From the IMG/VR virus record IMGVR_UViG_3300047560_000921, positions 62,001-126,000 of that record: 64,000 nucleotides of DNA; one strand, given 5' to 3'. Under the pieces are notes generated by a model, which was not told the DNA's origin, searched no databases, and saw only the letters and a list, made by a program, of their open reading frames with translations. Shown here in pieces: positions 9,804-47,709 of this stretch. A program made the translations under genes and the position numbers. Numbering within the stretch: position 1 is the stretch's first letter; every line of letters begins with the position of its first letter.

Positions 9804-9831
9804 AGCACCTCAAATTTGTTAACTATTTCGC

Positions 9832-9861
9832 TATTATACAATTAATTGGATTTATTGTCAA
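9832..9861 (-). promoter_or_regulatory. Early promoter repeat, copy 3
   Basis: Identical 30-mer to 9211-9240. Confidence 0.9.
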
Positions 9862-10024
9862 TAGCCCATTTCCCTTCAGGGCATCGGGTCTTTTTGAAGC
9901 TGGCTTTAGCAGGCAAGTAGCACCAGCACTTTTTACAAGTCCATGCAGCCTGCACAAAGAACGGACATGCAGTACACACATCCAAACGTCTTTGTTTTTC
10001 GGTAGCAGGGACTCTTTCAAGCAT
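9842..10024 (-). CDS. Small Cys-rich (probably Zn-binding) protein
   Basis: RLDVCTACP...CKKCWC...CPEGKW pattern; preceded by TAAATA. Confidence 0.65.
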   Translation of the reverse strand: MLERVPATEKQRRLDVCTACPFFVQAAWTCKKCWCYLPAKASFKKTRCPEGKWAIDNKSN

Positions 10025-10094
10025 ACACTATTTAATTGCTCGAAATTCATTTCGGTGTTATACTAGCGTTTTGACCACCCGCTTAAATATTACT

Positions 10095-10634
10095 ATGAGC
10101 AACGACACACTTGTATTGAACGCAGACTATCAACCTCTGTGCTTGGTTCCACTGAGCACTGTTGATTGGCAAACTGCTATTAAGGCCGTCTTCTCAGAGA
10201 AGGCTATTGTAATTAAAAACTATGACGACTGGGAAGTGCATAGTCAGCATCTGACGATTCCTGTCCCCAGCATCATTGTGGCTACAAAGTATGTCAACCC
10301 TAGCTTTGGCGTAGCGTTCAACCGTAAAATGGTTTACATGCGTGACGGCTACCGTTGCCAGTACTGCGGCGATGAGTTCCATGCCGACGACCTGACTTTT
10401 GACCACGTGATTCCGCGTAGCCAAGGCGGCGAAACTAACTGGGACAACATTGTAACGGCTTGCCGTACATGTAACTTCGTTAAAGGTACTGACCCAATGG
10501 AACCTTTGGTTGCACCACGTGCGCCAACGTATTGGGAAATGGCTAAACTTGCTCGTAAACAAACAATTTACATCAGGGACGAAGCGTGGAAGGAATACAT
10601 CCACTGGCCTGATGAGCTAGTAAGGGCCGCATGA
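10095..10634 (+). CDS. HNH endonuclease
   Basis: RDGYRCQYC...TFDHVIPRSQGG...WDNIVTACRTCN.VK; LVLNADY N-terminus; probable start ATG 10095. Confidence 0.9.
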   Translation: MSNDTLVLNADYQPLCLVPLSTVDWQTAIKAVFSEKAIVIKNYDDWEVHSQHLTIPVPSIIVATKYVNPSFGVAFNRKMVYMRDGYRCQYCGDEFHADDLTFDHVIPRSQGGETNWDNIVTACRTCNFVKGTDPMEPLVAPRAPTYWEMAKLARKQTIYIRDEAWKEYIHWPDELVRAA

Positions 10635-11335
10635 CAGTAGACGGAAAAGGTATAAGCCATAGTAGGAGTGCAGTAGATCCGGCAATTAGCAATTACGACA
10701 AACTAGTTGCGGAAACTGCGCTTCTTGGTATAGGCGATTTCGAACCGTTAGACTTCTTAGTTAACACTGCCCAGCTTGAACAAGAGCTGGCAGTGTTTTC
10801 TACTGACTGGGTCGATTACTTGCCGCGCACTGATAGGCCAAACAATCGCAAAGGCCTTAGCTTAACTACATTGGACATCGAAGGATGGGATCATCGTAGC
10901 TTGCCCAGCTTGCCTGAAGCCGCACAGGCCTTGGGTCGACCTGTTGGAGACAGTGCATTTACTAAACCCACTGCTCTATATGATGCTTGTGCTAGCTTGC
11001 ACCCATTGTTTGAAGAGTTCGCTCCCATTGGGCGTAGCTTTTTTGTTAAGTGTGGTACTGGTGGCTACTTTGTTCCCCATAGGGATAGCCCGGGATTCCC
11101 ACGTAGAGAATTTAGATTAGTATGCTTTGTTAAGAATGTTGCACCGTTACAGTATGACTGGTTAATGGATGATAGAAAAATTAACATTGAACAAGGCCGT
11201 GTATACTATGTGAACACGAAAAAGACGCATAGAACGATTAGCTGGACAGATGATAGCATCCACTTAATCATGAACATACCATTTACAGTTGCCAACGTCA
11301 ATAAGGTTATTGCCCATTTGCAACACAGACATTAA
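10631..11335 (+). CDS. AspH-like (aspartyl/asparaginyl beta-hydroxylase family) 2OG-Fe(II) oxygenase
   Basis: GGYFVPHRD (HxD)...GRVYYVNTKKTH...IHLI. Confidence 0.7.
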   Translation: MTVDGKGISHSRSAVDPAISNYDKLVAETALLGIGDFEPLDFLVNTAQLEQELAVFSTDWVDYLPRTDRPNNRKGLSLTTLDIEGWDHRSLPSLPEAAQALGRPVGDSAFTKPTALYDACASLHPLFEEFAPIGRSFFVKCGTGGYFVPHRDSPGFPRREFRLVCFVKNVAPLQYDWLMDDRKINIEQGRVYYVNTKKTHRTISWTDDSIHLIMNIPFTVANVNKVIAHLQHRH

Positions 11336-11970
11336 TGCTTATTACATGCGGACCTGCCAACGACCGTAGGACGTTTAATATATACATTCCTGAGTGGCCA
11401 AAGAAGATTGGTGTAACAGTTAGTGGCGGCATGGACAGTGCAATACTGTTATACCTTGTAGCAAAACTAAACAAAGAGTCGGCACACCCTAAGGAATTAA
11501 TTCCTTTTACAGTACCTCGTACGGACGGTGCTTACCGTTACAGTCCTGATATTGTGCAATATGTTAATAGGGTGTTAGATTTAAACTTACCTGCACCTAT
11601 CGCCATCGGCGATCCAACAGTACATCACAGCAAGCAGGTGGAAACAGGTACAGTGGCCATGCTAGACAATGGCATTGTGGATTATATATTTTACGGTAGC
11701 CAACAAACTCCGCCAAAGACTTGGCCCATGCCCGGGCTATATCCAGAACGCCCTACACACAACAAGTATAAACGTGCCCAAGTGCCCTTTGTGGACTTAG
11801 ACAAGCGTCATACTACCGAGTTGTACTATCAGTTCGGGCAAGAAGATTTATTGGAACTTAGTCACAGTTGTACAGAGAAACAAGTGGGCAGATGCGGACA
11901 ATGCTTTCAATGTGCAGAACGTCATTGGGCTTTTACACAATTAACCAAACGAGATCCAGGTATACAGTAA
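11335..11970 (+). CDS. QueC-like PP-loop ATP pyrophosphatase with Zn-binding C-terminus
   Basis: SGGMDS PP-loop; SC-x7-CGQCFQC-AER; lacks the canonical YGQ motif of QueC. Confidence 0.7.
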   Translation: MLITCGPANDRRTFNIYIPEWPKKIGVTVSGGMDSAILLYLVAKLNKESAHPKELIPFTVPRTDGAYRYSPDIVQYVNRVLDLNLPAPIAIGDPTVHHSKQVETGTVAMLDNGIVDYIFYGSQQTPPKTWPMPGLYPERPTHNKYKRAQVPFVDLDKRHTTELYYQFGQEDLLELSHSCTEKQVGRCGQCFQCAERHWAFTQLTKRDPGIQ

Positions 11971-12653
11971 TGGCTTACTTTTTAGAAAATGCTGTAGATT
12001 TATATACTCGCACCCAGTTGCTAATGGAGCACAGGGCCGCAGGATATAAAGAAGAACTAAAAGACTACGACCCTAACAGCTATGCACAGTACAAGGGCAG
12101 GTACTTTAGTAACTTAACACCTAAGGTGCTGGAGATTATCACGCCTATTATTGATAAAGAGTTAGGCGAAGGCACTTGGAAGATAGACAGCGGCAACTTC
12201 TTCGACACTAAAGTGCCGTATAGAATACACACTGACACAGGATTGCCTGATGTAAGTCCATGGAAAACGTTTGTATTCCCACTTAAAGTATTTGCTGGCA
12301 CTGACTATGACCCAAGTAAAAATGCTTTGTACGTACTAAACCAACGTTGGTATGGACCTGCGGCATTCTTTGTTAAAGGTAGCACAGATGTTGAAGAAGA
12401 ATACAACAAAGTGGTAACTGATTACCGGGATGTTGCAGAACTATGTACGGGATTCGACGAAGACTTAGTTGCAGATTGCAGTCACTTGCCTCGTAGTAAC
12501 TTTGAAGGCCTTACAGTCAAACAACGTTTTGATTGGAAACCAGGAAATGTATTAGTGTTTGACCGCAGGCACTTGCATGTTGCTAGTAACTTTTTACGAG
12601 CTGGCGCTCATGGTAAGATTGGGCTCAGCGTGTTTACTAGTGCGATAGAATAA
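11970..12653 (+). CDS. Putative 2OG-Fe(II) oxygenase
   Basis: IHTD (HxD)...WKPGNVLVFDRRHLH...KIGL; start ATG overlaps the previous stop. Confidence 0.6.
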   Translation: MAYFLENAVDLYTRTQLLMEHRAAGYKEELKDYDPNSYAQYKGRYFSNLTPKVLEIITPIIDKELGEGTWKIDSGNFFDTKVPYRIHTDTGLPDVSPWKTFVFPLKVFAGTDYDPSKNALYVLNQRWYGPAAFFVKGSTDVEEEYNKVVTDYRDVAELCTGFDEDLVADCSHLPRSNFEGLTVKQRFDWKPGNVLVFDRRHLHVASNFLRAGAHGKIGLSVFTSAIE

Positions 12654-12655
12654 CA

Positions 12656-13306
12656 TTACTTTAACATTTTGTTAAGTTGCGGAGTGGCACCGACGAGTTC
12701 TTGACATACATTTAGATACGCTATTTCCTGTGGTTTGTGTGTAGTTGACGGCATGTCATATTCTTTGCCACATACCGTTACTTTAACTGTGGTAATTTCG
12801 CACGGCTTTGCCCAAAGGCTAACTTCGGCACCGCCTAATATTGCTTCTCTTAGAGAATCGCGGATAACAACGTCGGTGTCGTCGCGTTGTCCGTTTGGTC
12901 TTGCTTTTCTACCATGCGAAGATAATCGACCAAACCTAGACTCTGTGCCCGTGCCTGGCTGATCATTGAATGCCGTTTGTTTCCTACGAACTCCCAATGG
13001 CTTTTCCGTTTCGCCAATTTTAACAACAGCTCCGTTAACTACAATAAAATACACCCACGATGTATGAGAAGAAAACATTGAATTGAAGTTAATGTTAATA
13101 TATCTCCAAAAGTTTTTAGTTAGATCTTTAATTTTAACATTACAGATATGTTTGAACCCATCTGGAATAAAATAGTCTATGTGTACATTAAGTTTGTTAG
13201 GATTTAGGTATTTCCCGCAAATTGCAGAATCGAGTAATGTAGTAACCGAAGTCACCGCCTCGCTCGGTTCTTTTTCGATAATATCAAATAACCTATTGAA
13301 CGACAT
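12656..13306 (-). CDS. GIY-YIG-like nuclease
   Basis: WVYFI....VVKIGET, a later R and E, and C-terminal PQLN. Confidence 0.5.
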   Translation of the reverse strand: MSFNRLFDIIEKEPSEAVTSVTTLLDSAICGKYLNPNKLNVHIDYFIPDGFKHICNVKIKDLTKNFWRYININFNSMFSSHTSWVYFIVVNGAVVKIGETEKPLGVRRKQTAFNDQPGTGTESRFGRLSSHGRKARPNGQRDDTDVVIRDSLREAILGGAEVSLWAKPCEITTVKVTVCGKEYDMPSTTHKPQEIAYLNVCQELVGATPQLNKMLK

Positions 13307-13307
13307 A

Positions 13308-13709
13308 TTAACCTCTCCGCATACGGCTGATTTCTACAGCCTCTTCATCACTGAACACAGGAACTGCATTGCTCTTGTGCATGGTCGCGATACCTTTAAC
13401 TTTGGTACCGGTATAGACTTTTGGCGCGGCCATAGTAGCTACACCGTTGTCTTGCCCCAAACTTTTGATGTGTTGGGTAGTTTCTCGGCCTGGCGGCGGC
13501 TTGAGTGAATAAGTGCTAGTCAGAGGAGCCGCTTCCATTGCACGTTTGCGCCGTTTATCTTCTGCCGTAATGCCGTAAGACTTTTTAAGTTCGGTCCAGC
13601 TAGCATCAAGTGCTTCTGCTCTGCGCTTGGCTTCTGCGCTTGCAAACTTACGTTTACCTTTTTTCTTGCCAGTGGTACTGAGACTGGGGTGTGCAAGGTG
13701 CATGGTCAT
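13308..13709 (-). CDS. Conserved basic phage protein
   Basis: YTGTKVKGIATMHKSNAVPVF motif typical of T4-like phages; GGAG RBS. Confidence 0.75.
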   Translation of the reverse strand: MTMHLAHPSLSTTGKKKGKRKFASAEAKRRAEALDASWTELKKSYGITAEDKRRKRAMEAAPLTSTYSLKPPPGRETTQHIKSLGQDNGVATMAAPKVYTGTKVKGIATMHKSNAVPVFSDEEAVEISRMRRG

Positions 13710-13740
13710 AAAAATCTCCAGAAAATTGCCAAATAAATAC

Positions 13741-13770
13741 TATTTTACAATAAATCATTATTCATGTCAA
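13741..13770 (-). promoter_or_regulatory. sigma70-type early promoter variant
   Basis: TTGACA-N17-TAAAAT. Confidence 0.7.
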
Positions 13771-14006
13771 CCGATTTAAACAAAGGATATCAATGCGGAC
13801 CCAAGGACTGCGCCATTATTATTAAAGAAAATGGCCAGCTAGATTTTATCTACCCTAGCCTAACAAACAGCATTGAGTTGCCGAAAAATGTAGAGTTCTT
13901 CAAAGAGGTTATTAAGCTAATTAATACCCAAATGCTCAACGACGACAACATTTCGGATTTACTTGACAAGATTGAAGTACAACGAGCAAAGCCTACTTTG
14001 CATTAA
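13764..14006 (+). CDS. Hypothetical protein
   Basis: 80-aa ORF filling the gap; TAAATA upstream. Confidence 0.55.
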   Translation: MSTDLNKGYQCGPKDCAIIIKENGQLDFIYPSLTNSIELPKNVEFFKEVIKLINTQMLNDDNISDLLDKIEVQRAKPTLH

Positions 14007-14038: not shown

Positions 14039-14404
14039 ATGGCAACATTAACATATAAAGGCTTTACAACACAAAATGACGCACTAAAAGCGTATGATGT
14101 TGACCTAGCCAAGCAGGACTTAATGAATCATTTCATGACTCGCAAAGGCGAGCGTGTTATGGCTCCTGAATTTGGTACGAACATTTGGGAACTGTTATTT
14201 GATCCGTTAACTCCAGAATTACAAAACTACATTAAACGTGAGTGCGAAATGATTGTTGCACAGGATATTAGATTTCAGTACATGGGTACAGAAGTAATTC
14301 AAATGCCCAGCGGTTTCACACTAGTAATAAGATTGATATATTTGCCAGATAACTTAGTAACAGATTTACAAGTAGAATTTGATGCTAATTCGGCAATACA
14401 ATAA
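14039..14404 (+). CDS. Baseplate wedge subunit gp25-like
   Basis: T.KGERVM.PEFGT.IW.LLFDP motif. Confidence 0.9.
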   Translation: MATLTYKGFTTQNDALKAYDVDLAKQDLMNHFMTRKGERVMAPEFGTNIWELLFDPLTPELQNYIKRECEMIVAQDIRFQYMGTEVIQMPSGFTLVIRLIYLPDNLVTDLQVEFDANSAIQ

Positions 14405-14413
14405 GGTTAAGCA

Positions 14414-17400
14414 ATGACTCAAACTATCAGACAAGAAAATTTATTTGCCGCAGAGAACTGGCAAAGTGTATATCAGAGTTTTAGAAACGCTGATTTCAAA
14501 GCCTACGATTTCGACACATTGCGTTCGGCAATGATTGATTATATTCGTACCAACTATCCAGAAGATTTCAACGACTGGATCCAGTCCAGCGAATTTGTTG
14601 CCCTTATTGACTTAGTTGCCTTCTTAGGACAAAACTTAGGTTTTCGTATTGACTTAAACAGTCGTGAAAACTTCATCGACACAGCAGAGCGTAAGGAAAA
14701 CGTATTACGTCTTGCTCGTTTCTTAAGCTACAACCCTAAGCGTAACATTGCCGCACAGGGTTTGATGAAAATTAAAGCCATTAAGACTACAGAAAACGTC
14801 TTGGATAACACAGGCAATAACTTAGCTAACAAAACAATTCAATGGGCAGGTGTAAACGACCCTGATAGCTTTGAAAAGTTTATTACTATTATGAATAGTG
14901 CGTTCAGCACTAACCATTTGTTTGGCAATCCCATTAAAGCAGGTACAGTCGGTGGCGTGACTAGCCACTTGTACAGTTTAAACAGTATTCCAGACCAGCA
15001 AGTTGCAATCAGCTACACTGCATCTGTTGCAGGTGTTAGCAGTAACTTTGAAATTTGTAACAGTGACTTTGCCGACTTGGGTTACTATGAAGAAGCAACA
15101 CCAGATCCAATGTCTGCGTTTAACTTGTTGTACCGCAATGACGGAACAGGTAATACTAGCGCCAACACTGGCTTCTTTGTTACATTCAAACAAGGCCAAT
15201 TAAACAAAAACGATTACCAACTTAACGATTACATTGAAAACCGTGTGTTAGACATTGACATTGAAAACATCAATGAGCAAGACGTTTACGTACAAACAAT
15301 TAACGAAGATGGTAGCGTTGTAACTAACTGGAAAAATGTGCCTAACCTAGTAGGCAACAACGTAATTTATAACAGTTACAGTCTTGGTGAGCGTAAGATT
15401 TGTAGCATTATTACTCGCGACAGTGATAAGATTAGTATTAAGTTTGGTGATGGCTACTTCAGTGATGTACCGCGTGGTATTATCCGTGTTTGGAGTCGTA
15501 CTAGCAATGGCTTAACATATACAATTCGTCCCGATGACATGAAAAACATCACTTGGGATATTGCATACTACGACAAAGTTGGTAAGAAGCAGTTCTTGAC
15601 ATTGATTGCTGACTTAGAATATAACGTAAACAATAGCACACCGTCCGAAAGCATTGACAGTGTTCGTGCTAACGCACCTAGTGCATACTACAGCCAGGAC
15701 CGCATGGTCACAGGCCAAGACTATAGCGTATATCCATTAACACAAAGCTCTAACATCTTAAAGATTAAAGCGGTTAATAGGATTCACAGCGGCTTTAGCA
15801 GATATACTAACGTAACTGATCCAACTGGAACTAACCAAAGTTTGGATATCTTCAGCGATGATGGTTATGTTTACAAAGACGAGTTCTATACAACCAATTA
15901 CTATACAGTTAGCAACAATTACTTTTTGCGTAACTTAATCACCGAACACATCTCTGGGGCATTTACACAACCTGAAGTTGTTAACATGTTCTACAGCATC
16001 TTCCCTGCAATCACATACAGTGAAATTACAGGAAGCCCTACTTCTGTGGCATGGAACCGTGCCACAATTAACAGCGGCACAAGTACTGGTTACTTTACGG
16101 GAATCCCACAAAGTGGCACAACTGCCGAAGTTATTAAAGTAGGATCGGCTACTACTGGTCTATTGCGTTTATTGCAACAAGGATCCTTGATAGAGTTTGA
16201 CAGTGCAGGCACAAAAACATGGGCCGCAATTACTAACGTATATGGCAATGGCCTGGGCGAACAGGATTTAAACGGCGTCGACACTGGCAAAAAGCTAGAC
16301 GGCTCAGGCACTGTAGCACTAAGCAAAAACATCAAGTCTGCTAGCACTATTTCTAGAATCATTCCTAGATTTAAGCAAGAGTTCAGTGCAACTGAGTACG
16401 GATTAATCTTCGACTTGCTAGTGGCCAAAAACACTTTTGGTATCCGTTACGATTACCTAACACAAACTTACAAAATTGTAAGCCAAAACAACTTAGGATC
16501 TAGTACATTTTACAGCACTGAGTTTGCCGGAGACACTAGTGAGCTAAACAAAGACAACAGCTGGCTGATTAAAGTAACTTACGAAAACGGACAGTATGTA
16601 GTAGTTAATAAAGCTATTCGTTACATTGTCGGTAGCGAAAACAAAGTACGTTTCTTCAATGAAAACTTTAAGAAGGCACTTAACAACGAAACAACTAAAG
16701 TAGAACGCGACAGTATCTACTTCTTGCAAACAAACACCAATGCTGAAGGCACAGGTATTCTAGGCAAGAAGGCAGAGTTCAAGAGCGACAAGTATTTCAT
16801 TGGCGCAGACAGTTATACAGACAACACCAAGTTGGTAGTAGCAGTGTCTGACGACAACAGTGACTTCTTACCCGACGATCCATATGTATTTGAACGCCTA
16901 GTAGGCTCTAACCAAATTAAAGTTGACTACACAACAGTTAACGGAATTACATTCCAACAAGCATATGGCGACGATTATGAAGACACTGCAACAACACAAT
17001 ATGTAACTGGACGTAAAGACTTGTACATGCAATGGCATCATGTTGCTGAAAGCAATCAGCGTATTGATCCAAGTACAATTAACATTATCGACTTGTTTGT
17101 ACTGACTAGCGACTACGATTTAACATATCGTCGTTGGTTAAAGAACGGCGGCAAAATACAGGACATGCCGCTTCCTCCAACACCGCAGGAATTGTATCAA
17201 AACTTTGCCGCGTTGGAAGAAGTTAAGACTAGTAGCGATACTATTGTATATCGTCCTGCCAAGTACAAGTTGCTATTTGGAAATCATGCAGACAAAGAAC
17301 TAGTTGGCAAATTTAAAGTTATTAAGATGCCAGGTACAGCAATGACAGACAACGAAATAAAGAGTAAAGTACTAACAGCCATTGATGAATTTTTCTCTAT

Positions 17401-38909: not shown

Positions 38910-39536
38910 TTAGTTTATCAAATGTTCGGCATCTTTTAAGACGGATACTTCGGGATCGTGTTCGGACTTTAGTGTGTAGCTTTTTATAATAACTGGGGTA
39001 GGATTTCTGCCCTCTAGAATCCCTAAAATATTACTGCCGAATTCATACTTTGCCCTGCTATACGGTGGTACGATTTCTACAATTTTTACATCGTATAAAT
39101 GATTTCTACTTTCGGGCCCAAGTCGATGTATACCTTTTACTGTACTTTTTGTGTGCTGGTAGTCTCTTGCCATGTAGCATACCTTCCGTCCAAAGTTATT
39201 TGCACTGTCCAGGAATACTGGAGTTAGAAACTCGTTAATTACATGCAAGTTTTCTTTTAGCATAGAAAACTTATGCCTGTCGGCAAACACATTGCCTATA
39301 GTAGCGTAAGGCATACTAGACCAATGAGACCTGGTAACAAACATAGACATTTCTTCCTGCTCATTAAACCAACCCCATGCGCTATGTCCCAGCTCATTAT
39401 TAGCACTGATGTTAAATGATTTTCTAAAGTATTGGTCAATAGCAGTAGTAATCTTAACTTTCATGTTAGACCCGTGCGCTTGATATATTTCAAGCATACG
39501 TGGCAAGTCGGCACTAGTGAGTTTGCGTACACTCAT
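38910..39536 (-). CDS. GNAT-like protein, paralog A
   Basis: VRKLTSADL..MLEI start; collinear with 43558..44175. Confidence 0.5.
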   Translation of the reverse strand: MSVRKLTSADLPRMLEIYQAHGSNMKVKITTAIDQYFRKSFNISANNELGHSAWGWFNEQEEMSMFVTRSHWSSMPYATIGNVFADRHKFSMLKENLHVINEFLTPVFLDSANNFGRKVCYMARDYQHTKSTVKGIHRLGPESRNHLYDVKIVEIVPPYSRAKYEFGSNILGILEGRNPTPVIIKSYTLKSEHDPEVSVLKDAEHLIN

Positions 39537-41231: not shown

Positions 41232-42779
41232 TTATAAATTTAAAAGTCTGTTTTTATAAAGCTGGAACCATTCTGCTTTTTTGTCTTTAAGGAAGTCTGC
41301 ACTAACGTTTTTAACGCTCACGCCTGCTAAGTCGTCGGCAGTAAGTCCAGTACCGTTCATCCACATAAACTGGAAGAACCCTGCAGGCTTAATACGACCG
41401 CTACGATATCCGCGCATAATATATTCGTCTGCAATAGCCCATGCCTTAGGTAAAGTCATATGCGGATTGCTCCACATGCTCCATCTAAAGAAGCTGTTGT
41501 TAGCAACACCTTTGTTGACGATGTTATATCCGTAAGATTCGGGATCAGCTTCGAACTTGCTAGGCCAGATTTTCTTTTCGTTAATGTTGAAGCCCAAAGG
41601 TTCAACTGTATATCCGTCTAGTGGACAGTTTTCGTCTTCGACCCACTTCATCCATTCGCGGAATGTTTCTTCCGTTTCGTGCGGCAAGCCTACAATAAAC
41701 CCACTGCTCATTGTAATGTCTTTGCCCCATGCTTCGTCTCGCAACCAGTGTAATAGTTCTTTGCTTTTCTCTGGGTGCAGTCCTTTGCCAATGGCTAACG
41801 CACTCTTATGGTTTAAACTTTCTAATCCAAATACACAGGTTTTAAGTCCGCTTTCTTTTAGCAGGGGTGCCATGTCCCTATTAGCATGGATTAAATCATG
41901 TCTTAGGTATGCACTAAACTGTATCTTAAAAGGAAGTTGTGAAAAGACTTCGTTGTATAGCTTTTCTACTTTATAGATGCTGTCGTTGTATGTATCGTCT
42001 GCAAAGATATAGTTAGTAATGCCCCACTTTTCGTAGTTACGAATGAACTCTTCTTTTAACGGCGCACTATCCTTGATGTAGTCGAACTTGTCTTTGCCGT
42101 TCATAGGAAAACTACAAAAGTCGCATCTAAAGATACATCCACGACTAATTTCAATGGGCAACACTTCGTTTTCGTAGATTAAGTCATTGTCTTCCCATAG
42201 TACTTGACTGGTTTGAAAATTCCACTCAGGGTCTTTAATCCAATCGACTTCAACTTGATGCTCGTTGATAGGAACCATTTTAAGTACAGTTTCGTCGTAA
42301 GGCTTACCTGCCAAGAAGTTAGCGTACTCTACTGTAGTATGGTCAGCATAGCCATGAATGAAGCAGTCTACTAGTTTACTGTTCTTGTATTGGCTACGTT
42401 GCCCGCCTAGTACAATTTTTGTCTTGGGATTTACTTGTTTGATATGATTAATAAACGCATAACTGACTTCAGGCTTAAACGGAAAGTCTTCAGTATATCT
42501 TAATTCGCGCCTATAGTGGTTAGGCCTACTTTTATCGCTTAGTGCTTGGTCTCTGATAGCATACAAGGTGCTACTGAATCCAACGAATAATGTGTTAGGA
42601 CCTACAAACTTGTCTACAATTTGTTTAAGCTCGTCCAAGCTCCATTCGGTTAAGTAGTCGACAACTTGTACTGTATAACCGTTCTTTCTTAATTCCGTAG
42701 CAATGCGATAAGCACCTAGTAGGCGCTGAAAAACCGTAGTGCTAGTGAACTCCGTAAAAATTACAATGTCTGCTGTCAT
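41232..42779 (-). CDS. Cobalamin-binding-domain radical SAM enzyme
   Basis: LGAYRIAT.LR.NGY.VQVVD, VGFS, IVLGG (B12 domain); EISRGCIFRCDFC; FADDT; FGLES; FIVGLPHET. Confidence 0.9.
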   Translation of the reverse strand: MTADIVIFTEFTSTTVFQRLLGAYRIATELRKNGYTVQVVDYLTEWSLDELKQIVDKFVGPNTLFVGFSSTLYAIRDQALSDKSRPNHYRRELRYTEDFPFKPEVSYAFINHIKQVNPKTKIVLGGQRSQYKNSKLVDCFIHGYADHTTVEYANFLAGKPYDETVLKMVPINEHQVEVDWIKDPEWNFQTSQVLWEDNDLIYENEVLPIEISRGCIFRCDFCSFPMNGKDKFDYIKDSAPLKEEFIRNYEKWGITNYIFADDTYNDSIYKVEKLYNEVFSQLPFKIQFSAYLRHDLIHANRDMAPLLKESGLKTCVFGLESLNHKSALAIGKGLHPEKSKELLHWLRDEAWGKDITMSSGFIVGLPHETEETFREWMKWVEDENCPLDGYTVEPLGFNINEKKIWPSKFEADPESYGYNIVNKGVANNSFFRWSMWSNPHMTLPKAWAIADEYIMRGYRSGRIKPAGFFQFMWMNGTGLTADDLAGVSVKNVSADFLKDKKAEWFQLYKNRLLNL

Positions 42780-43546
42780 TAAAGTCTTTTAAGTATAGGT
42801 AAGAAAATCATACACGGATCTAGTTCCCACCATTTTTCACCGAAGTTATAGTTAGCAGGATGCTTGTGATGGTTATTGTGCCAACCTTGTCCCCAAGCAA
42901 AGTATCCTAATAGCGGCACGTTGCGGCTATTATCGTCGATTTCATGATTCCTATATCCAAAGCCTTTAAGGTGGCAGAATAAGTTGATGCAAGCCTCTTG
43001 GTGTATGCCAGTAATCATGGGCAACAAGATTAAGCCAACTGCAAGTTGCCAGTTGAGTAATGCTGTAGCAATGATGATACCCCATACTATCTTATAGTAG
43101 TTAGTATGTACCCATACTTGGAATTTGTCACGTAATAAGTCTACGGCATATTTCAAGTTAACATCGGTTGGTGCAATTTTCCAACTCCAGCTAAGGTAAG
43201 CATGGAACTTGCCATGAATAGGACTGTGTATGTCTCTTGGTTTGTCAGAATGACTATGATGATATCCTCTGTGTAAAGCTACCCAGAAAATAGGACTGCC
43301 TTGTCCAGCCATGCATCCAAGTATAGTAATAACTTTTCTTGTAAACGCACTCATCTCTGGAATACACTTGTGACTAAGCACACGGTGTAATCCAATGGCA
43401 CTACCTAAACCACTAATTAAAACCCAGCCAACGGGCCAAAACCATAGGTACGACAAATCGCCCCATAGTACTAGTGCTGTTGCACCTAGCAAGGCCGCTA
43501 AGTGTACAGGCCAAAATAATTTAATGCTGTGTCCGGTAGTTTTCAT
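42779..43546 (-). CDS. Membrane acyl (delta-9-type) desaturase
   Basis: Three His boxes HRVLSH, HRGYHH, WHNNHH; DIHSP; hydrophobic segments. Confidence 0.9.
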   Translation of the reverse strand: MKTTGHSIKLFWPVHLAALLGATALVLWGDLSYLWFWPVGWVLISGLGSAIGLHRVLSHKCIPEMSAFTRKVITILGCMAGQGSPIFWVALHRGYHHSHSDKPRDIHSPIHGKFHAYLSWSWKIAPTDVNLKYAVDLLRDKFQVWVHTNYYKIVWGIIIATALLNWQLAVGLILLPMITGIHQEACINLFCHLKGFGYRNHEIDDNSRNVPLLGYFAWGQGWHNNHHKHPANYNFGEKWWELDPCMIFLPILKRL

Positions 43547-43551
43547 ATGCG

Positions 43552-43557
43552 TATTTA
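43552..43557 (-). promoter_or_regulatory. Late promoter TAAATA 5 nt before the desaturase ATG
   Basis: TAAATA-CGCAT-ATG; same spacing as at 10084 and 14028. Confidence 0.55.
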
Positions 43558-44175
43558 TTATTCTATCTCTTTGCGAAACTCTGGCTTTAAGTACTGCATA
43601 GTAACAACTAAGTCAGTGGGCCATAGTGCGCTGTTCATTAACCACATCCATTGGTCCAGGAACGGCGGCCTTGTGTTAGCGGGAATTACATTCATTACTA
43701 CGCTATCATAACGTTCCTGGCGTTGCTTAACATACTTGGGCCAAATGCGTTTGTGTGCAAGGTAGTAACGCTTAGGGTATGCCATAATGTACTGAAAGCA
43801 ATCACGCTTTTCTGCAAAGTCAATGGCGTGTTGCATTACTTCTACGAGTCCATTACGGTTACCTAAACTGGGCACACGTTCTGTTCTGCGAGTAATAGCT
43901 TTTTGTATGTACCACATGTTAACGTCAGGATTGAAGTACTGGGTCATGGCCGCATACAATTTGTTATCGTTAGTTTCGTCTACATATCCCCACATCATGA
44001 ACTGGGGATTATCTTCGCCTAAATATAAATTGGCAAGATTATTGTGCTTGTTCATGGACATGTCTGCCCTATAATAAGGAACACTGCTTACGTCAACACC
44101 AGCAAAGGTATTGTAGTCTCGCTGTATCTCATCGATTTGGTCAAAGTAACTAAGGTCAAGTTTTACGATTTTCAT
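43558..44175 (-). CDS. GNAT-like protein, paralog B
   Basis: IVKLD...I.EI, WGY.DE, AI.FAE, YD..V..VIPANTRP...LKPE. Confidence 0.5.
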   Translation of the reverse strand: MKIVKLDLSYFDQIDEIQRDYNTFAGVDVSSVPYYRADMSMNKHNNLANLYLGEDNPQFMMWGYVDETNDNKLYAAMTQYFNPDVNMWYIQKAITRRTERVPSLGNRNGLVEVMQHAIDFAEKRDCFQYIMAYPKRYYLAHKRIWPKYVKQRQERYDSVVMNVIPANTRPPFLDQWMWLMNSALWPTDLVVTMQYLKPEFRKEIE

Positions 44176-45107
44176 TCTAGTGTCTTAATAAAGTCTGTGG
44201 CTAACATTTCAAACCTATGGTCGTTATAAGGTATGTACTGTAGCATTTCTTGCTGAGCCTGTACGTTTAACAACTTCAATGTTTCGTACCCATGATACTT
44301 CTTTCTAGGTTTCAAGAAGAAGTACTTATTATATATGGAATACTTGCTACTTGCAATACTTAATTTACCAACTAGTTTATCTGCTAGCAAATCTTGTACA
44401 ATCGAATCGTTAACATAGGCTTTCATAATCTCAGGGGTGTAACTAAAGAACTCACTGATAACAGGGCGTTGGTTGAGTACACTGTACTTTGGTACACTCA
44501 AGTCATTATTTTCCCTAACATAATAAACCCAATTGTATTCTTGCTTTGGTTCATCAGCTAGCCACGATTTCCAGTTGAATACTTTTTCAAAGAATACTTC
44601 GCCTGTGCCTAGTACGGGAATATCGTCTTGGATTTTGTCTAGTGCCCACAAACATTGTATTTGTGCAAGTTGAATACTTTGATACTTCATACCAATTGGT
44701 ATGTACTCTTTACTACGATAAAACTCAACAATGTCTATCTCTAGGATTTTGTATTCTACGTTGTAGTAGTTACAAAAGTCTATGGCATACTTAATGTCGT
44801 GGTCATTGTATCCGTCCTTGAACCGAATAATAGTGGCACGAACACGTCGCTTTAGTCCTGCCCAAATAAATGCTTGAAGTACAAGTTCGCTGTCAATGCC
44901 GCCACTGAAGAATACATTAAACTTTTGCCCAGGGTATTTGTCTGCAAGCATTTTGCATACGTTAAGGCTTTCTTGTTTAAAATCTCCAACGGGACGGCTT
45001 GGTTTGCCCCAATGCATTTTAAATGTGCTGTAAGGATTCTTACGTAATGCAAAAGGAACGTTGTCGTAAGTCCAATGGAAGTGGTTGTTTTCTGTGTACT
45101 GGATCAT
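44172..45107 (-). CDS. PP-loop (asparagine-synthetase-like) adenylating enzyme
   Basis: FFSGGIDSE, YA..FC, VLGTGE, R.KYHGYE. Confidence 0.7.
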   Translation of the reverse strand: MIQYTENNHFHWTYDNVPFALRKNPYSTFKMHWGKPSRPVGDFKQESLNVCKMLADKYPGQKFNVFFSGGIDSELVLQAFIWAGLKRRVRATIIRFKDGYNDHDIKYAIDFCNYYNVEYKILEIDIVEFYRSKEYIPIGMKYQSIQLAQIQCLWALDKIQDDIPVLGTGEVFFEKVFNWKSWLADEPKQEYNWVYYVRENNDLSVPKYSVLNQRPVISEFFSYTPEIMKAYVNDSIVQDLLADKLVGKLSIASSKYSIYNKYFFLKPRKKYHGYETLKLLNVQAQQEMLQYIPYNDHRFEMLATDFIKTLE

Positions 45108-45970
45108 TGTGTAAATGGAGGCATCTTATCAAATTCGTGGTCAATGCTGATACGTATAAAACTTCTACGCCCTTCACTGCCTTCTAAGATTTCCATATCT
45201 CCGCGTCTGTGTATTGTAGCCCAATTGTCAAATACTAGCACGTCATTGATTTCCCATTTGTGTTCTAGGAAGTCAGTTGCTTCGATTTGACTAGTGCTTA
45301 ACTCTCTCATGAATTCGTTTGAAAGGCGTAGTTCGCCTTCTTCTTTGTCTATGACTGTTCGTAAGATCCATGCGCCGTCATTGCCAAATGCATTATAACG
45401 TATAAACTCTTCGCCTGTCCATGGATGCTTGTCTAGTGCCGGATACCATTTTTGATTAGTAAAGTTTTTCTGCCAGCTATTGTACAAGAACTTTAAGTTG
45501 TCCAAGTTAATGTTATGCTTGTCCTTTTCAGTCCATTCTCGTCTAATGATACCTAAGTCTGCAACATCAGTGCTACCGCCAGTCATGTTAGTAGGTAAAT
45601 CCTTACAGTACAACAATCGGAATGGGAACGGCTCCAGGCCACGCTCATTGGCAATGTCACAGTGCCATGTAAGGCTCTTGTATAGTCTAGGATAGCTTTT
45701 ATCATCGTATTCTGTATATGCGACACCGTTGCTGGCAACCTTAAAATGTTCTTTAGTATGATTCTGATACATATCCGCAGTCCATGGGCGCCCGAACTTC
45801 TTACTAAATGCAGCCATTTCATCTGCACTTACATCTATGTTTTTAAACACTAAAGCCTTACGACGGTAAATTAATTCACGCAGTTCGATGTCGTCAAAAG
45901 CCATAATCTCGTCGAAGGTACCTTCTACAATGCTACCAACATCTTTTGTTATAGGAGTATGTTTAATCAT
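45104..45970 (-). CDS. TauD/TfdA-family dioxygenase
   Basis: LVFKN, WHCD, GGSTDVAD, HPWTG, HKWEINDVLVFDNWATIHRR; probable start ATG 45970. Confidence 0.85.
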   Translation of the reverse strand: MIKHTPITKDVGSIVEGTFDEIMAFDDIELRELIYRRKALVFKNIDVSADEMAAFSKKFGRPWTADMYQNHTKEHFKVASNGVAYTEYDDKSYPRLYKSLTWHCDIANERGLEPFPFRLLYCKDLPTNMTGGSTDVADLGIIRREWTEKDKHNINLDNLKFLYNSWQKNFTNQKWYPALDKHPWTGEEFIRYNAFGNDGAWILRTVIDKEEGELRLSNEFMRELSTSQIEATDFLEHKWEINDVLVFDNWATIHRRGDMEILEGSEGRRSFIRISIDHEFDKMPPFTQ

Positions 45971-45971
45971 A

Positions 45972-46565
45972 TTAGTAATCGTAAAATCTAGGGTTGTGGG
46001 CAACGTCGAAAATAATGTGCAGTCTATCCGTAGTGCCATTATTTCCACCCCAGTGTTTAGCTCTATTGTTAAAGCGCCACAGTTCGCCAGGTTTACATTT
46101 AATGCTTTCAGTTTCGGTTATGAACTCAACATCAGGATTAGTAGCCAGCACAATATGATACCTATTATGAATAGCAAAATACAGTCCGGGATCAACGTGC
46201 GGGTATATCTTACCGCCAGGCACTAGCTTTGAAACGTATGCTCTACCCAAATGGCCAGCTGGTATTAAAGTCATTGCATGTTCAATTAATTTTCTAACTT
46301 CGGGCAATTGCGTATAGTGTTCTGAGTCTACGATACTAATTGCATGTTGGTCTGCTAGGTCTTTTGCATCCCAGTGTTCCCCTTGATTCCTGCTTAAAAT
46401 TTCCGCAGGAGGATGAATACGCAAATGAATACTTTCGACTTCCTCTAACGCAGGGCTAATGGCTTTCACTTTGGTATGACTAGCAAACCAATCACTGTGT
46501 GCTAATACTTCTTCTAGCGCGGCTGTAACATCTATGTTAGATGCAATGTGGTCAAAATATATCAT
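45972..46565 (-). CDS. AspH-like hydroxylase
   Basis: LGRAYVSKLVPGGKIYPHVD...RYHIVL.TN...GELWRFNN...H...N....RLHIIFD. Confidence 0.85.
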   Translation of the reverse strand: MIYFDHIASNIDVTAALEEVLAHSDWFASHTKVKAISPALEEVESIHLRIHPPAEILSRNQGEHWDAKDLADQHAISIVDSEHYTQLPEVRKLIEHAMTLIPAGHLGRAYVSKLVPGGKIYPHVDPGLYFAIHNRYHIVLATNPDVEFITETESIKCKPGELWRFNNRAKHWGGNNGTTDRLHIIFDVAHNPRFYDY

Positions 46566-47116
46566 TTGTTGTAAGTAGAAAACACAAGATGCACTCTAGG
46601 TTTGAAACTGGCATTCAATGCAGTGTGCCAAACAGTGCTTACTAATGTATATAGTCTACCTTCCTCTTCCATTCTGTACAAGCCCTTCTCCGTGGCTATA
46701 AAATTATTAGGATTGGTGCTAATAGGGATATGATACCTAACTGCATCGCTGTCCTTGTGCCAACTATAACAAGTCTTTGGCCTTAATAACATAAGCCTAA
46801 TCCTACCAAGTGGCAACGGACTAACTTCTTGTACCTTGTTAATTACTTCTTCCCAATATCTTCCTTTTACATAAGAAGATATGTGAGTATAGTTTTCTTC
46901 TTGGTCTAGCTCTATGTTATTTTGTCTATCGTATAAGCTGCCAACACCGTCATACATTTGTTCTTTTATGGTATCAAATTTGCCGCTGTGACTTAAGGCA
47001 ATTTGATTAGCATCCTTGTGGAAAGGATATTGACGATACAGCACGTCTAGTTCTAGTTTTAACCGTATAGGGTCGAATTTAACGTCTAACTTTTGTACGT
47101 CTAGTGTATCGCTCAT
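46562..47116 (-). CDS. AspH-like hydroxylase
   Basis: GRIRLMLL.P..CYSWHKD...RYHIPI.TN...HTALN....RVHLV. Confidence 0.85.
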   Translation of the reverse strand: MSDTLDVQKLDVKFDPIRLKLELDVLYRQYPFHKDANQIALSHSGKFDTIKEQMYDGVGSLYDRQNNIELDQEENYTHISSYVKGRYWEEVINKVQEVSPLPLGRIRLMLLRPKTCYSWHKDSDAVRYHIPISTNPNNFIATEKGLYRMEEEGRLYTLVSTVWHTALNASFKPRVHLVFSTYNK

Positions 47117-47709
47117 ATAGTACTCGTATCGCCTTTGTATGTTACATTACTTATGTAACTCTTCTCATCGGCGATGTCCACCGCAAAAGCAATTACTTTA
47201 ACTAATTGACTTACAGACATAATACTGTTAGGCTGTCTAATTTGTGCGTAGGTATAAGTGCTAGTGTCTGTCAAGAAATCTGTTTTAACGTGTCCTGGCT
47301 TTACATTAATGATTTTACACTTGCAGCCAGCAGCCATATTCATTTGATAGCCTGCATCGTCTAATGCTTTCTTGTGTAGTCCGTAAGGGTATACTTTGCC
47401 CATGTGCATACATGCATCTCCTGCTAGACTACTGACATTGACAATCATGTAGTTGGGTTTCTTTTGATGAAAGCCGTACCAACGTTGTAGCAAGTCTACT
47501 TGTGCATACCTAAAGTACGCATTGTTGATAAACAAGTCGCAGTCCAGAGTTTCGTTTATAATACGCTCTTGGTCGTCACCCTTACTGATATCATAGCCAT
47601 TGGATCTACTGAACCCAATAACTTCAATACCTAGGCCTGTATAGTAGTCATATAGCGCCTTACCGATGCCTTTTGTGTGTCCCGTTATTGCTATCTTATT
47701 TGGAGTCAT
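47113..47709 (-). CDS. Short-chain dehydrogenase/reductase
   Basis: ITGHTKGIG, FINNA, NVSS, YGLHK (YxxxK), PG.VKT. Confidence 0.85.
   Translation of the reverse strand: MTPNKIAITGHTKGIGKALYDYYTGLGIEVIGFSRSNGYDISKGDDQERIINETLDCDLFINNAYFRYAQVDLLQRWYGFHQKKPNYMIVNVSSLAGDACMHMGKVYPYGLHKKALDDAGYQMNMAAGCKCKIINVKPGHVKTDFLTDTSTYTYAQIRQPNSIMSVSQLVKVIAFAVDIADEKSYISNVTYKGDTSTI

What the first reader, a model, noticed from the sequence alone, without database searches (positions are those of the whole stretch)
10631..12653. Satellite modification triplet: AspH-like, non-canonical QueC-like, 2OG oxygenase
Seen: three coupled genes behind a late-type promoter and an HNH gene. The QueC-like protein has the PP-loop and four Cys but lacks YGQ, and it lies 50 kb from queE. 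Known: QueC homologues have been repurposed in defence systems (QatC, CBASS Cap9). Inference: it may not be the preQ0 synthase but a third adenylating enzyme of the modification system. The window holds three PP-loop enzymes and at least five Fe/2OG oxygenases.
Basis: partly seen in the sequence, partly recalled or inferred. Interest (0 to 1): 0.6.

Follow-up and report, generated by a model that had tools for sequence, protein, structure and literature searches.

The report
Phage QueC-like ligase with oxygenase partners
A freshwater giant phage carries a tightly coupled four-gene operon centred on a virus-only offshoot of the QueC enzyme family that has lost the residues that recognise 7-deazaguanine and usually travels with small iron/2-oxoglutarate oxygenases, so it is probably not a queuosine-pathway enzyme but an ATP-driven amide-forming enzyme whose substrate is still unknown.

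Summary
The genes are real. HNH (10071-10634), A (10631-11335), B (11335-11970) and C (11970-12653) overlap by ATGA/TAATG. No late-type promoter lies upstream.

B folds as a QueC-family PP-loop enzyme with a Cys4 zinc ribbon (Cap9 Z 14.8, QueC 13.8, QatC 12.3). It lacks the canonical YxQxHxxE, VPxRN and YPDC substrate motifs and scores 26 bits against a 150-bit QueC equivalog cut-off.

C is a DSBH Fe/2OG oxygenase. A is a remote AspH-like cupin. Both have an invariant HxD...H.

B belongs to a large family that looks virus-only (1759 50%-identity clusters). In 84 related loci an A homolog is adjacent to B in 38, in either gene order. In cultured Ralstonia phage RsoM2USA the B homolog is coupled to another AspH-like gene.

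B-family genes occur in complete or near-complete phage genomes without FolE or QueE. A cyanophage has a QueE-PRT-QueD-FolE set with no QueC-family gene.

B is therefore most likely not the preQ0 synthase. It is probably an ATP-dependent carboxylate-activating, amide-forming enzyme that works with oxygenases on another substrate.

Caveat: this record is about 65% complete, has FolE, QueD and QueE, and shows no canonical QueC.

The parts
10071..10634 (+). HNH-motif protein (187 aa from TTG 10071; an ATG at 10095 is an alternative start). It is the first gene of the coupled unit.
   Evidence: Pfam HNH E 8e-17 and HNH_5 E 1.5e-16. phrog_16726 E 3.5e-40 over the full length. ATGA overlap with A. 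Homologs lie within 6 genes of B in 10 of 84 loci, and an HNH-cluster gene is present in 25 loci.
10631..11335 (+). A: remote AspH-like cupin Fe/2OG oxygenase, 234 aa.
   Evidence: No Pfam hit of its own. H150-R-D152...H200 is invariant in 26 homologs. 30% identical (E 4e-18) to a Pelagibacter phage Mosig protein annotated as an Asp_Arg_Hydrox domain. hhalign to locus cluster c23: 92%, 160 columns; c23 in turn matches the window's Pfam-positive AspH-like gene at 99.6%. 23 of 30 Atlas look-alike clusters carry PF05118. Adjacent to B in 38 of 84 loci.
11335..11970 (+). B: virus-specific QueC-family PP-loop ATP pyrophosphatase with a C-terminal Cys4 zinc ribbon, 211 aa.
   Evidence: Pfam QueC matches residues 148-202 only, E 1.3e-8. 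TIGR00364 scores 26.1 bits against a 150.3-bit cut-off. AF2 pLDDT 92.9. VIA Z: Cap9 14.8, QueC 13.8 and 13.1, QatC 12.3, next TilS 11.7. Family alignment A1 gives the invariant residues. The family has 1759 representative clusters. All listed Atlas clusters are 97-100% viral.
11970..12653 (+). C: Fe(II)/2-oxoglutarate oxygenase with a double-stranded beta-helix fold, 227 aa.
   Evidence: AF2 pLDDT 88.7. Foldseek top hits AsqJ, PHD2 and FtmOx1, E about 2e-6. VIA Z 12.5-14.1 to SnoN, prolyl and leucine hydroxylases and others. H87-x-D89...H203 and K216 are invariant in 28 homologs. Within 6 genes of B in 33 of 84 loci.
41232..47709 (-). Associated genes, not part of the operon: B12-binding radical SAM 41232-42779, FA-desaturase-like 42779-43546, 311-aa PP-loop 44172-45107, TauD 45104-46048, AspH-like 45972-46565 and 46562-47116, SDR-like 47113-47709.
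   Evidence: Pfam. Their homologs (clusters c7, c30, c56, c23, c29) lie within 10 kb of B homologs in 20, 10, 5, 14 and 9 other phage loci.
61744..62616 (-). QueE-like radical SAM protein (290 aa). It is listed because the finding refers to it and is probably not part of the module.
   Evidence: NCBIfam QueE models give E 8e-13 to 2e-9, all far under their cut-offs. tblastn finds 195 phage records annotated QueE; the best is Synechococcus phage BUCT-ZZ01 at 46%.

Best explanation
HNH-A-B-C is one coupled expression unit whose core is an enzyme pair conserved in giant freshwater and marine phages: a QueC-family PP-loop enzyme (B) and an AspH-like Fe/2OG oxygenase (A). In this lineage a second Fe/2OG oxygenase (C) joins them.

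Inferred mechanism:
- B binds ATP at SGGMDS and adenylates a carboxylate on its substrate, releasing PPi.
- The acyl-adenylate is then resolved by ammonia or an amine to give an amide. This is the chemistry shown for QueC and Cap9 and proposed for QatC.
- A and C hydroxylate or otherwise oxidise the same substrate before or after that step.
- The substrate is not 7-carboxy-7-deazaguanine read in the canonical way. It is more likely an amino-acid-like or other small carboxylate handled by the phage's large set of oxygenases, radical SAM and PP-loop enzymes.

B is therefore not the preQ0 synthase of the phage's FolE/QueD/QueE genes.

Shown here: gene coupling, folds, motif presence and absence, family size and viral restriction, neighbourhood conservation, and independence from FolE/QueE.

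Inferred only: the chemistry, the joint action of A, B and C, and the class of substrate.
For: Fold and cofactor sites of B:
- pLDDT 92.9. The four best structural matches are Cap9, two QueC structures and QatC (Z 14.8 to 12.3). They stand only slightly above generic PP-loop enzymes at Z 11.7 or less.
- The PP-loop, PF(x)4K and Cys4 ribbon are invariant in the family.

Substrate site remodelled:
- The motifs that a 2026 mutational study (PMC13329287) found essential in QueC are absent. B has PRxDG in place of YxQxHxxE and HHSxQ in place of VPxRN.
- There is no conserved Tyr-x-Asp. The candidate segment is either deleted in many members or reads YPxRP with a variable x.
- In Cap9 and QueC that Tyr stacks on the base and that Asp reads its Watson-Crick edge (PMC13279940).

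Distribution:
- B-family genes occur without FolE and without QueE in RsoM2USA (complete, 343.8 kb), G020 (100% complete) and G013 (92% complete).
- Conversely, cyanophage BUCT-ZZ01 (complete) has QueE-XGPRT-QueD-FolE and no PF06508 gene.
- Control: the same search finds the full-length canonical QueC of Vibrio phage nt-1 at E 5.7e-54.

Partner conservation:
- A is adjacent to B in 38 of 84 loci, as A>B or B>A.
- RsoM2USA gp134 (B homolog, 36% identity) overlaps gp135, an AspH-like protein (hhalign to c11 99.8%, c23 95%, A 74%).
- C lies within 6 genes of B in 33 loci, and a radical SAM gene within 3 genes in 32.

Context points to small-molecule enzymes:
- FA-desaturase-like, SDR, TauD, AKR, P450, RPE65, Rieske, AMP-binding, BKACE, and TctC/DctP binding proteins.
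Against: - No substrate is identified, and the chemistry is inferred from family membership only.
- B is the only QueC-family gene in a 231-kb record that does encode FolE, QueD and QueE.
- None of the other FolE- or QueE-bearing records with a B gene shows a canonical QueC. All of those records are incomplete.
- QatC also lacks the canonical motifs yet is thought to use a deazaguanine, so motif loss alone does not exclude CDG.
- Neighbourhood counts include related phages and are not independent.
- Gene islands of auxiliary genes can keep synteny without shared function.
- A was not folded.
- The A-B complex prediction gave no verdict.
Confidence: 0.58

Rival explanations
1. B is a very divergent but functional QueC. 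It converts the CDG made by the phage's FolE/QueD/QueE into ADG or preQ0 for a DNA or nucleotide modification.
For: B is the only PF06508 hit in the 231-kb record, which has FolE (C1:127409-127942), QueD (C1:200290-200703) and a QueE-like gene. No canonical QueC was found in any of the 23 B-bearing records, including the four with QueE. The zinc ribbon, PP-loop and PF(x)4K are retained.
Against: - YxQxHxxE, VPxRN and the Tyr/Asp of YPDC are missing. Single alanine changes at Y35, R99 and Y131 abolish E. coli QueC activity (PMC13329287).
- TIGR00364 scores 26 bits against a 150-bit cut-off.
- B is 49.8 kb from QueE and is instead fused into an operon with oxygenases.
- B homologs occur in complete genomes without FolE or QueE.
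- The same QueE-PRT-FolE gene set works without any QueC-family gene in BUCT-ZZ01.
- No DpdA was detected, although that search is insensitive.
Confidence: 0.12
2. B is a Cap9/QatC-like protein-nucleobase ligase. It attaches CDG, from the phage's QueE or from the host, to the amino terminus of a phage or host protein, for instance as a counter-measure to host immunity.
For: Cap9 is the best match both by profile (E 8.7e-5) and by structure (Z 14.8, rmsd 2.5 over 154 residues). B shares Cap9's C-x7-C-x2-C-x2-C spacing. The phage can apparently make CDG and shows no detected QueC or DpdA to use it. A-family proteins have an invariant Gly7/Ser9 in an otherwise variable N-terminal tail.
Against: - Cap9 keeps the ancestral Y/FxQ(x)5E, RN and H(x)4YxDC motifs. 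B has none of them.
- No CD-NTase, Cap10/TGT, QatA, QatB or QatD partner lies next to B.
- PADLOC gives only a C-terminal QueC hit at E 1.9e-6.
- No conserved N-terminal glycine at position 2 was seen in A or C.
- The complex prediction gave no verdict.
Confidence: 0.1
3. The module modifies a nucleobase in phage DNA, in a nucleotide or in tRNA. One route would be oxidation of a methyl group to a carboxyl by the oxygenases, followed by ATP-dependent amidation by B. The HNH protein would then act on unmodified DNA.
For: PP-loop enzymes of this fold class commonly activate nucleobase positions; TilS, TtuA, MnmA and NcsA are among the structural neighbours. An HNH gene is translationally coupled and recurs nearby in other loci. 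ThyX and nucleotide-metabolism genes are in the window. A weak NT5C-like and a SprT-like gene lie upstream of A-B in many loci.
Against: - No nucleic-acid-binding domain was detected in A, B or C.
- A and C resemble amino-acid, prolyl and small-molecule hydroxylases, not TET/JBP or AlkB.
- The recurrent neighbours are typical small-molecule enzymes.
- HNH genes are frequent mobile insertions in large phages.
Confidence: 0.14

Closest known systems
[quoted passage not shown]
   Same: Rossmann-type PP-loop fold with SGGxDS, PF(x)4K and a C-terminal Cys4 zinc ribbon, at a similar size (211 aa against about 220 aa). Structural Z 13.8 and 13.1. hhalign to Vibrio phage nt-1 QueC 91%, E 1e-7.
   Different: - Lacks YxQxHxxE, VPxRN and YPDC.
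- The zinc ribbon has x7 spacing where the published QueC motif has x8.
- Has an extra N-terminal beta-hairpin, residues 1-20.
- Not linked to queD or queE.
- The family looks restricted to viruses.
Cap9, QueC-like enzyme of type IV CBASS (PDB 9nto)
   Same: Best sequence-profile and structural match. Minimal size. Same C-x7-C-x2-C-x2-C spacing.
   Different: Cap9 retains the ancestral CDG-binding residues and sits next to a CD-NTase and Cap10. B has neither those residues nor those neighbours.
QatC of QatABCD (PDB 9y01)
   Same: A QueC-family enzyme whose canonical substrate motifs have been replaced while the PP-loop and zinc site are kept. Z 12.3.
   Different: QatC is about 400 aa with N- and C-terminal extensions, has its own motif set, and is encoded with qatA, qatB and qatD. 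No QatC model matches B in PADLOC.
Asp/Asn beta-hydroxylase-like cupins (PF05118) and other Fe/2OG oxygenases (SnoN, GriE, prolyl hydroxylases, AsqJ)
   Same: HxD...H iron triad in both A and C. DSBH fold for C. Remote homology of A to PF05118 proteins.
   Different: Neither A nor C reaches a Pfam cut-off. C's structural ranking is flat across subfamilies, so no substrate class can be read from it.
Pairs of an ATP-dependent PP-loop amide-forming enzyme with Fe/2OG oxygenases in carbapenem and clavam biosynthesis (CarA/CarC, beta-lactam synthetase/clavaminate synthase). Recalled from general knowledge as a functional analogy, not tested.
   Same: A carboxylate-adenylating PP-loop enzyme working in one pathway with 2OG oxygenases. 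In thienamycin clusters B12-radical-SAM enzymes take part as well.
   Different: Those PP-loop enzymes are AsnB-like, not QueC-like. No homology beyond the shared PP-loop fold: carbapenam synthetase is only a weak Foldseek hit.

Membership tests
Canonical QueC (preQ0 synthase) | SGGxDS pyrophosphate loop | tested here: met
   SGGMDS at residues 30-35; S30, G31, G32, D34 and S35 are invariant in 30 homologs.
Canonical QueC (preQ0 synthase) | C(x)8CxxCxxC zinc motif | tested here: met
   C179-x7-C187-x2-C190-x2-C193, all invariant. The spacing is x7, as in Cap9, where the published QueC motif has x8.
Canonical QueC (preQ0 synthase) | YxQxHxxE motif (Y35 essential in E. coli QueC) | tested here: not met
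   The strand after helix 1 reads PFTVPRTDG; the family consensus is FTVPRxDG. Motif definition from PMC13329287.
Canonical QueC (preQ0 synthase) | VPxRN motif (R99 essential) | tested here: not met
   The aligned segment is the nearly invariant HHSxQ.
Canonical QueC (preQ0 synthase) | YPDC motif: Tyr stacks on the deazaguanine and Asp reads N1/N2 | tested here: not met
   The hhalign-equivalent segment is variable or deleted across the family. The nearby YPxRP has a variable third residue (E, A, G, K, N, S, V and others). No residue-level structural superposition was available.
Canonical QueC (preQ0 synthase) | Score above the equivalog cut-off, and a full-length Pfam match | tested here: not met
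   TIGR00364 scores 26.1 bits against 150.3. PF06508 matches only model positions 154-208. The nt-1 control matches positions 1-208 at E 5.7e-54.
Canonical QueC (preQ0 synthase) | Gene linkage or co-occurrence with queD and queE | tested here: not met
   B is 49.8 kb from the QueE-like gene and about 127 kb from QueD. B homologs are present in three complete or near-complete genomes without FolE or QueE.
Canonical QueC (preQ0 synthase) | Converts CDG to preQ0 and complements a queC deletion | not testable with these tools
   Needs a bench assay.
Cap9 (type IV CBASS) | Encoded beside a CD-NTase and Cap10 (TGT-like) | tested here: not met
   The neighbours are HNH, A, C and phage structural genes. 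No PF01702 hit in the record.
Cap9 (type IV CBASS) | Retained Y/FxQ(x)5E, RN and H(x)4YxDC motifs | tested here: not met
   Absent from alignment A1. Motifs from PMC13329287.
QatC (QatABCD) | About 400 aa with extensions, its own motif set, and qatA/B/D neighbours | tested here: not met
   B is 211 aa. PADLOC gives no QatC hit. No such neighbours.
QueC superfamily (PF06508 fold) | PP-loop Rossmann core plus C-terminal zinc ribbon, closest in structure to QueC, Cap9 and QatC | tested here: met
   Z 14.8, 13.8, 13.1 and 12.3 for the four QueC-family structures, then 11.7 or less. Pfam QueC E 1.3e-8, above the 22-bit cut-off.
Fe(II)/2OG oxygenase (gene C) | DSBH fold with an HxD/E...H iron triad | tested here: met
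   H87, D89 and H203 are invariant.
AspH-like cupin, PF05118 (gene A) | Match to the family model, and an HxD...H triad | tested here: inconclusive
   No Pfam hit. The triad H150, D152, H200 is invariant. Homology is remote only: tblastn to an annotated Asp_Arg_Hydrox protein E 4e-18; hhalign through cluster c23; Atlas look-alikes. The fold was not predicted.

The most novel reading that the evidence does not exclude
The QueC-like/AspH-like pair is a virus-specific two-enzyme system that carries out a conjugation chemistry not yet described. It would be an ATP-dependent ligation of a hydroxylated or nucleobase-like carboxylate onto a protein, metabolite or nucleic acid during infection. One possibility is a phage counterpart or antagonist of the bacterial deazaguanylation used by CBASS type IV and Qat.
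Probability: 0.12. Interest if true: 0.85.

Novelty: new variant of a known kind. Interest (0 to 1): 0.55.

Why it matters
The QueC scaffold is currently known in three roles: preQ0 synthesis, and protein deazaguanylation in two bacterial immune systems. The 2026 survey of PF06508 read here describes no viral clade.

This finding defines a large family that looks virus-only: 1759 clusters at 50% identity. Its members keep the ATP and zinc sites but have a rebuilt substrate site and a recurrent oxygenase partner.

Practical consequences:
- Automatic annotations that call these genes "QueC / queuosine biosynthesis" are probably wrong. They would inflate counts of 7-deazaguanine pathways in viromes.
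- A cultured phage, Ralstonia phage RsoM2USA gp134/gp135, carries the pair, so the function can be tested directly.

Tried and rejected
- Megablast of 10000-13800 against GenBank phages gave no match.
- Direct BLASTP of A against C, and of either against RsoM2USA gp135, gave nothing. Direct hhalign of A against the window's AspH-like genes was also negative, at 2.8% or less. The link appears only through intermediate clusters.
- The profile of A against PDB sequences gave nothing significant.
- PF01702 (TGT) searches were negative everywhere. They also miss the experimentally proven DpdA2 of Vibrio phage nt-1, so I do not use them as evidence of absence. Querying with the nt-1 464-aa ORF (VPFG_00171) that I took as the DpdA2 candidate, with ArcS and with QueC found nothing in the record.
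- The complete 348.6-kb relative could not be searched because the record is not held.
- Complex prediction of B with A returned no verdict: score 0.32 against a control of 0.14. This is not evidence either way.
- P0222, a 417-aa fusion of a B domain with an unknown C-terminal half, gave no Pfam hit and no match to any locus.
- A RiPP-precursor reading of the alternating 111-aa/336-aa gene pairs around one distant B homolog was dropped. The small ORFs look like split N-terminal twitch domains of radical SAM enzymes.
- The late-promoter claim was tested and not found.
- Reads: only contigs were available. Three short identical contigs in a library labelled metatranscriptomic, but flagged as probably DNA, do not show expression.
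Full report
**Where the window lies.** The window is bases 62001-126000 of a 231,384-bp IMG/VR virus record that CheckV rates about 65% complete. Near-identical DNA occurs in freshwater metagenomes. A 348,611-bp NCBI metagenomic contig carries the same locus at about 90% protein identity, so this is a giant phage of roughly 350 kb. The only cultured phage with a B homolog is Ralstonia phage RsoM2USA, 343.8 kb.

**The observation.**
- Four same-strand ORFs are translationally coupled. HNH 10071-10634 and A 10631-11335 share ATGA. A and B (11335-11970) share TAATG. B and C (11970-12653) share TAATG.
- Homolog N-termini support the ATG at 11970 as the start of C rather than the upstream TTG.
- B has SGGMDS and four cysteines (C179, C187, C190, C193) and no YGQ.
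- A QueE-like gene lies 49.8 kb away at 61744-62616(-). It is divergent: NCBIfam QueE hits of E about 1e-12 are far under their cut-offs. It is nevertheless 46% identical to an annotated cyanophage QueE and matches 195 phage records.
- The window holds three SGGxDS ORFs.
- It holds at least five Fe/2OG-type oxygenases: A, C, one TauD and two Pfam-positive AspH-like genes.
- The claimed late-type promoter is not there. The 8-mers enriched upstream of genes in this genome are (A/G)ATAAATA, and no TATAAATA-like site with up to one mismatch lies between 9800 and 10100.

**What B is.**
- Pfam QueC matches only the C-terminal 55 residues (E 1.3e-8), plus weak PP-loop hits at the N-terminus. The QueC equivalog model scores 26 bits against a cut-off of 150.
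- A 30-member family alignment gave a confident model, pLDDT 92.9.
- The model's best structural matches are the four QueC-family structures: Cap9 Z 14.8 (rmsd 2.5, 154 residues), B. subtilis QueC 13.8, Erwinia QueC 13.1 and QatC 12.3. They sit just above generic PP-loop enzymes such as TilS 11.7, NcsA 11.3 and LarE 10.8.
- Cap9 is also the best sequence-profile hit in the PDB, at E 8.7e-5.

**How B compares with the published QueC signature.** A 2026 study defines canonical QueC by SGGxDS, YxQxHxxE, VPxRN, YPDC, a conserved Lys and C(x)8CxxCxxC. It shows that Y35A, R99A and Y131A are inactive (PMC13329287).
- The B family keeps the PP-loop, PF(x)4K and the zinc ribbon, the last with Cap9's x7 spacing.
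- It has FTVPRxDG where YxQxHxxE should be, and HHSxQ where VPxRN should be.
- It has no conserved Tyr-x-Asp. The segment that hhalign places opposite YPDC of Vibrio phage nt-1 QueC is variable or deleted, and the nearby YPxRP has a variable third residue.
- In Cap9 and QueC that Tyr stacks on the deazaguanine and that Asp reads its Watson-Crick edge. QatC replaces both and is suspected of using another substrate (PMC13279940).
- B is therefore a member of the QueC superfamily, but not of the QueC, Cap9 or QatC families.

**What A and C are.**
- C has no Pfam hit. Its model (pLDDT 88.7) is a double-stranded beta-helix. It matches Fe/2OG oxygenases only: Foldseek E about 2e-6, and Z 12.5-14.1 to SnoN, a Burkholderia 2OG oxygenase, a viral prolyl hydroxylase, GriE, AsqJ and proline hydroxylases. 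H87-x-D89...H203 and K216 are invariant. The structural ranking is flat, so it gives no substrate.
- A also has no Pfam hit, but H150-R-D152...H200 is invariant. A is 30% identical to a Pelagibacter phage protein annotated as an Asp_Arg_Hydrox domain. It aligns at 92% hhalign probability to a locus cluster (c23) that matches the window's own Pfam-positive AspH-like gene at 99.6%. Most of its Atlas look-alike clusters carry PF05118.
- I did not fold A, because the structure jobs were exhausted.

**The family and its company.**
- An exhaustive profile search finds 1759 representative clusters (50% identity) at E up to 1e-3 and 889 at up to 1e-10. Nearly all of the 150 best listed are 180-240 aa and match full-length.
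- All listed Atlas look-alike clusters are 97-100% viral.
- The 2026 PF06508 survey describes ten clusters and none is viral.
- I fetched 84 loci with B relatives of 23-90% identity, clustered their ORFs and read the gene order. An A homolog is directly adjacent to B in 38 loci and within three genes in 42, as A>B in most and B>A in others. C is within six genes in 33. A radical SAM gene is within three genes in 32. These counts include related phages and are not independent. A and C accompany mainly B proteins of at least about 40% identity.
- At greater distance the partner changes subfamily but not kind. In RsoM2USA the B homolog gp134 overlaps gp135, which hhalign assigns to AspH-like clusters (c11 99.8%, c23 95%, A 74%).
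- In the close 348.6-kb relative a 500-aa radical SAM gene precedes HNH-A-B-C.
- Genes that flank B elsewhere are homologs of the window's large enzyme cluster: B12-binding radical SAM 41232-42779, desaturase-like 42779-43546, 311-aa PP-loop 44172-45107, AspH-like 46562-47116 and SDR-like 47113-47709.
- Other B or A neighbourhoods hold P450, RPE65, PhyH, aldo-keto reductase, AMP-binding ligase, BKACE, Rieske oxygenase and TctC/DctP binding proteins. This is a small-molecule flavour rather than a nucleic-acid one.

**Is B the phage's QueC?**
- For: the 231-kb record has FolE, QueD and a QueE-like gene, and B is its only PF06508 hit. None of 23 larger B-bearing records has a full-length QueC match.
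- Against, from B's distribution: among those records FolE occurs in 5 and QueE in 4, all of them incomplete. RsoM2USA (complete), G020 (100% complete) and G013 (92% complete) carry B without either gene.
- Against, from the pathway's distribution: the closest QueE is in Synechococcus phage BUCT-ZZ01 (complete). It sits in QueE-XGPRT-hyp-QueD-FolE with no QueC-family gene in the genome. The present phage likewise has a phosphoribosyltransferase between QueE and FolE.
- The search method does detect a canonical phage QueC: nt-1 at E 5.7e-54.
- I therefore rate the QueC reading at about 0.12. The unseen third of the genome keeps it alive.
- Absence of DpdA cannot be claimed. PF01702 misses the proven DpdA2 of nt-1, and nt-1 protein queries found only FolE.

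**Most likely mechanism.** The fold and the invariant ATP and zinc sites are shown. From them I infer that B adenylates a carboxylate and passes the acyl group to ammonia or an amine. The coupled oxygenases A and C would act on the same substrate. That substrate is not CDG bound in the canonical way. Its identity is open. I lean towards an amino-acid-like or other small carboxylate, with a nucleobase or a protein terminus as the alternatives. A complex prediction for A with B gave no verdict and is not used.

**Verdict.**
- The feature is a new variant of a known kind: a large, apparently virus-only QueC-superfamily clade with a remodelled substrate site and an oxygenase partner.
- It is testable in a cultured phage.

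Noticed in passing
window 61744-62616(-); record C1:126391-126888, C1:127379-128074 and C1:200251-200754 (loci L015, L016): QueE-like, phosphoribosyltransferase and FolE genes lie within 4.5 kb of each other, with QueD far away. No canonical QueC or DpdA was detected. Synechococcus phage BUCT-ZZ01 has QueE-XGPRT-hyp-QueD-FolE and no QueC-family gene. This suggests a nucleotide-level 7-deazapurine route that needs neither QueC nor a transglycosylase. The QueE-like protein reads CNFTCAGFGC where CX3CX2C is expected.
   Followed up: partly
record C1:139063-148222 (outside the window) and window 33613-35025, 41232-42779: The record has at least ten radical SAM genes. Seven lie in a head-to-tail array, and several are of the N-terminal-twitch type. 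Homologous arrays flank distant B homologs in other phage contigs (for example L083, L084, L088, L091).
   Followed up: partly
record C1:54929-57108, window 39533-40603 and 44172-45107, C1:173159-174256, C1:186354-187274: The 231-kb record has seven ORFs with an SGGxDS PP-loop. This is an unusual number of ATP pyrophosphatases for one phage. Only B hits the QueC model.
   Followed up: no
window 12656-13306(-): A 216-aa singleton gene (weak endonuclease PHROG hit, E 1.4e-5) sits between C and the conserved 133-aa gene. It is absent from the close relatives L011, L014 and L017-L019, so it is probably a recent mobile insertion.
   Followed up: partly
L014:6577-8079 versus window 9823-10050: The 348.6-kb relative has a 500-aa radical SAM gene directly upstream of HNH-A-B-C. 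Its family is that of window 41232-42779. The window has only a short Cys-rich ORF on the opposite strand at that place.
   Followed up: no
window 9861-9833(-), 9523-9495(-), 13770-13742(-): There are two perfect sigma-70 consensus promoters (TTGACA-17-TATAAT) and one 11-of-12 match (TTGACA-17-TAAAAT). All three read away from or towards the module on the minus strand. By contrast, (A/G)ATAAATA marks other gene starts, for example at 13732, 29587 and 43552.
   Followed up: partly
L103 and L104 (contigs of 107 and 77 kb): 58%-identical A homologs and short QueC-like genes (185-196 aa) lie among AMP-binding ligase, FA-desaturase-like, TctC and DctP solute-binding proteins, BKACE, SDR, Rieske and 2OG oxygenase genes. 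This is a dense island of small-molecule metabolism on what look like phage contigs.
   Followed up: no
P0222 (417 aa, metagenomic): One B-family member is fused to a C-terminal half of about 215 aa that has no Pfam hit and no match in the fetched loci. It could be a Rosetta-stone partner or a missed stop codon.
   Followed up: partly
window 10293-10585, 12235-12446, 13321-13508: Three short contigs identical to the window occur in a freshwater library labelled metatranscriptomic, which the tool flags as probably DNA. This is compatible with transcription but is no proof of it.
   Followed up: partly
window 17643-26771(+): A 3042-aa ORF lies directly after a 1075-aa ORF (14414-17641) and a 121-aa ORF (14039-14404). 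The counterparts of those two in relative L014 carry Pfam DUF8360 and GPW_gp25. Nothing more was examined.
   Followed up: no
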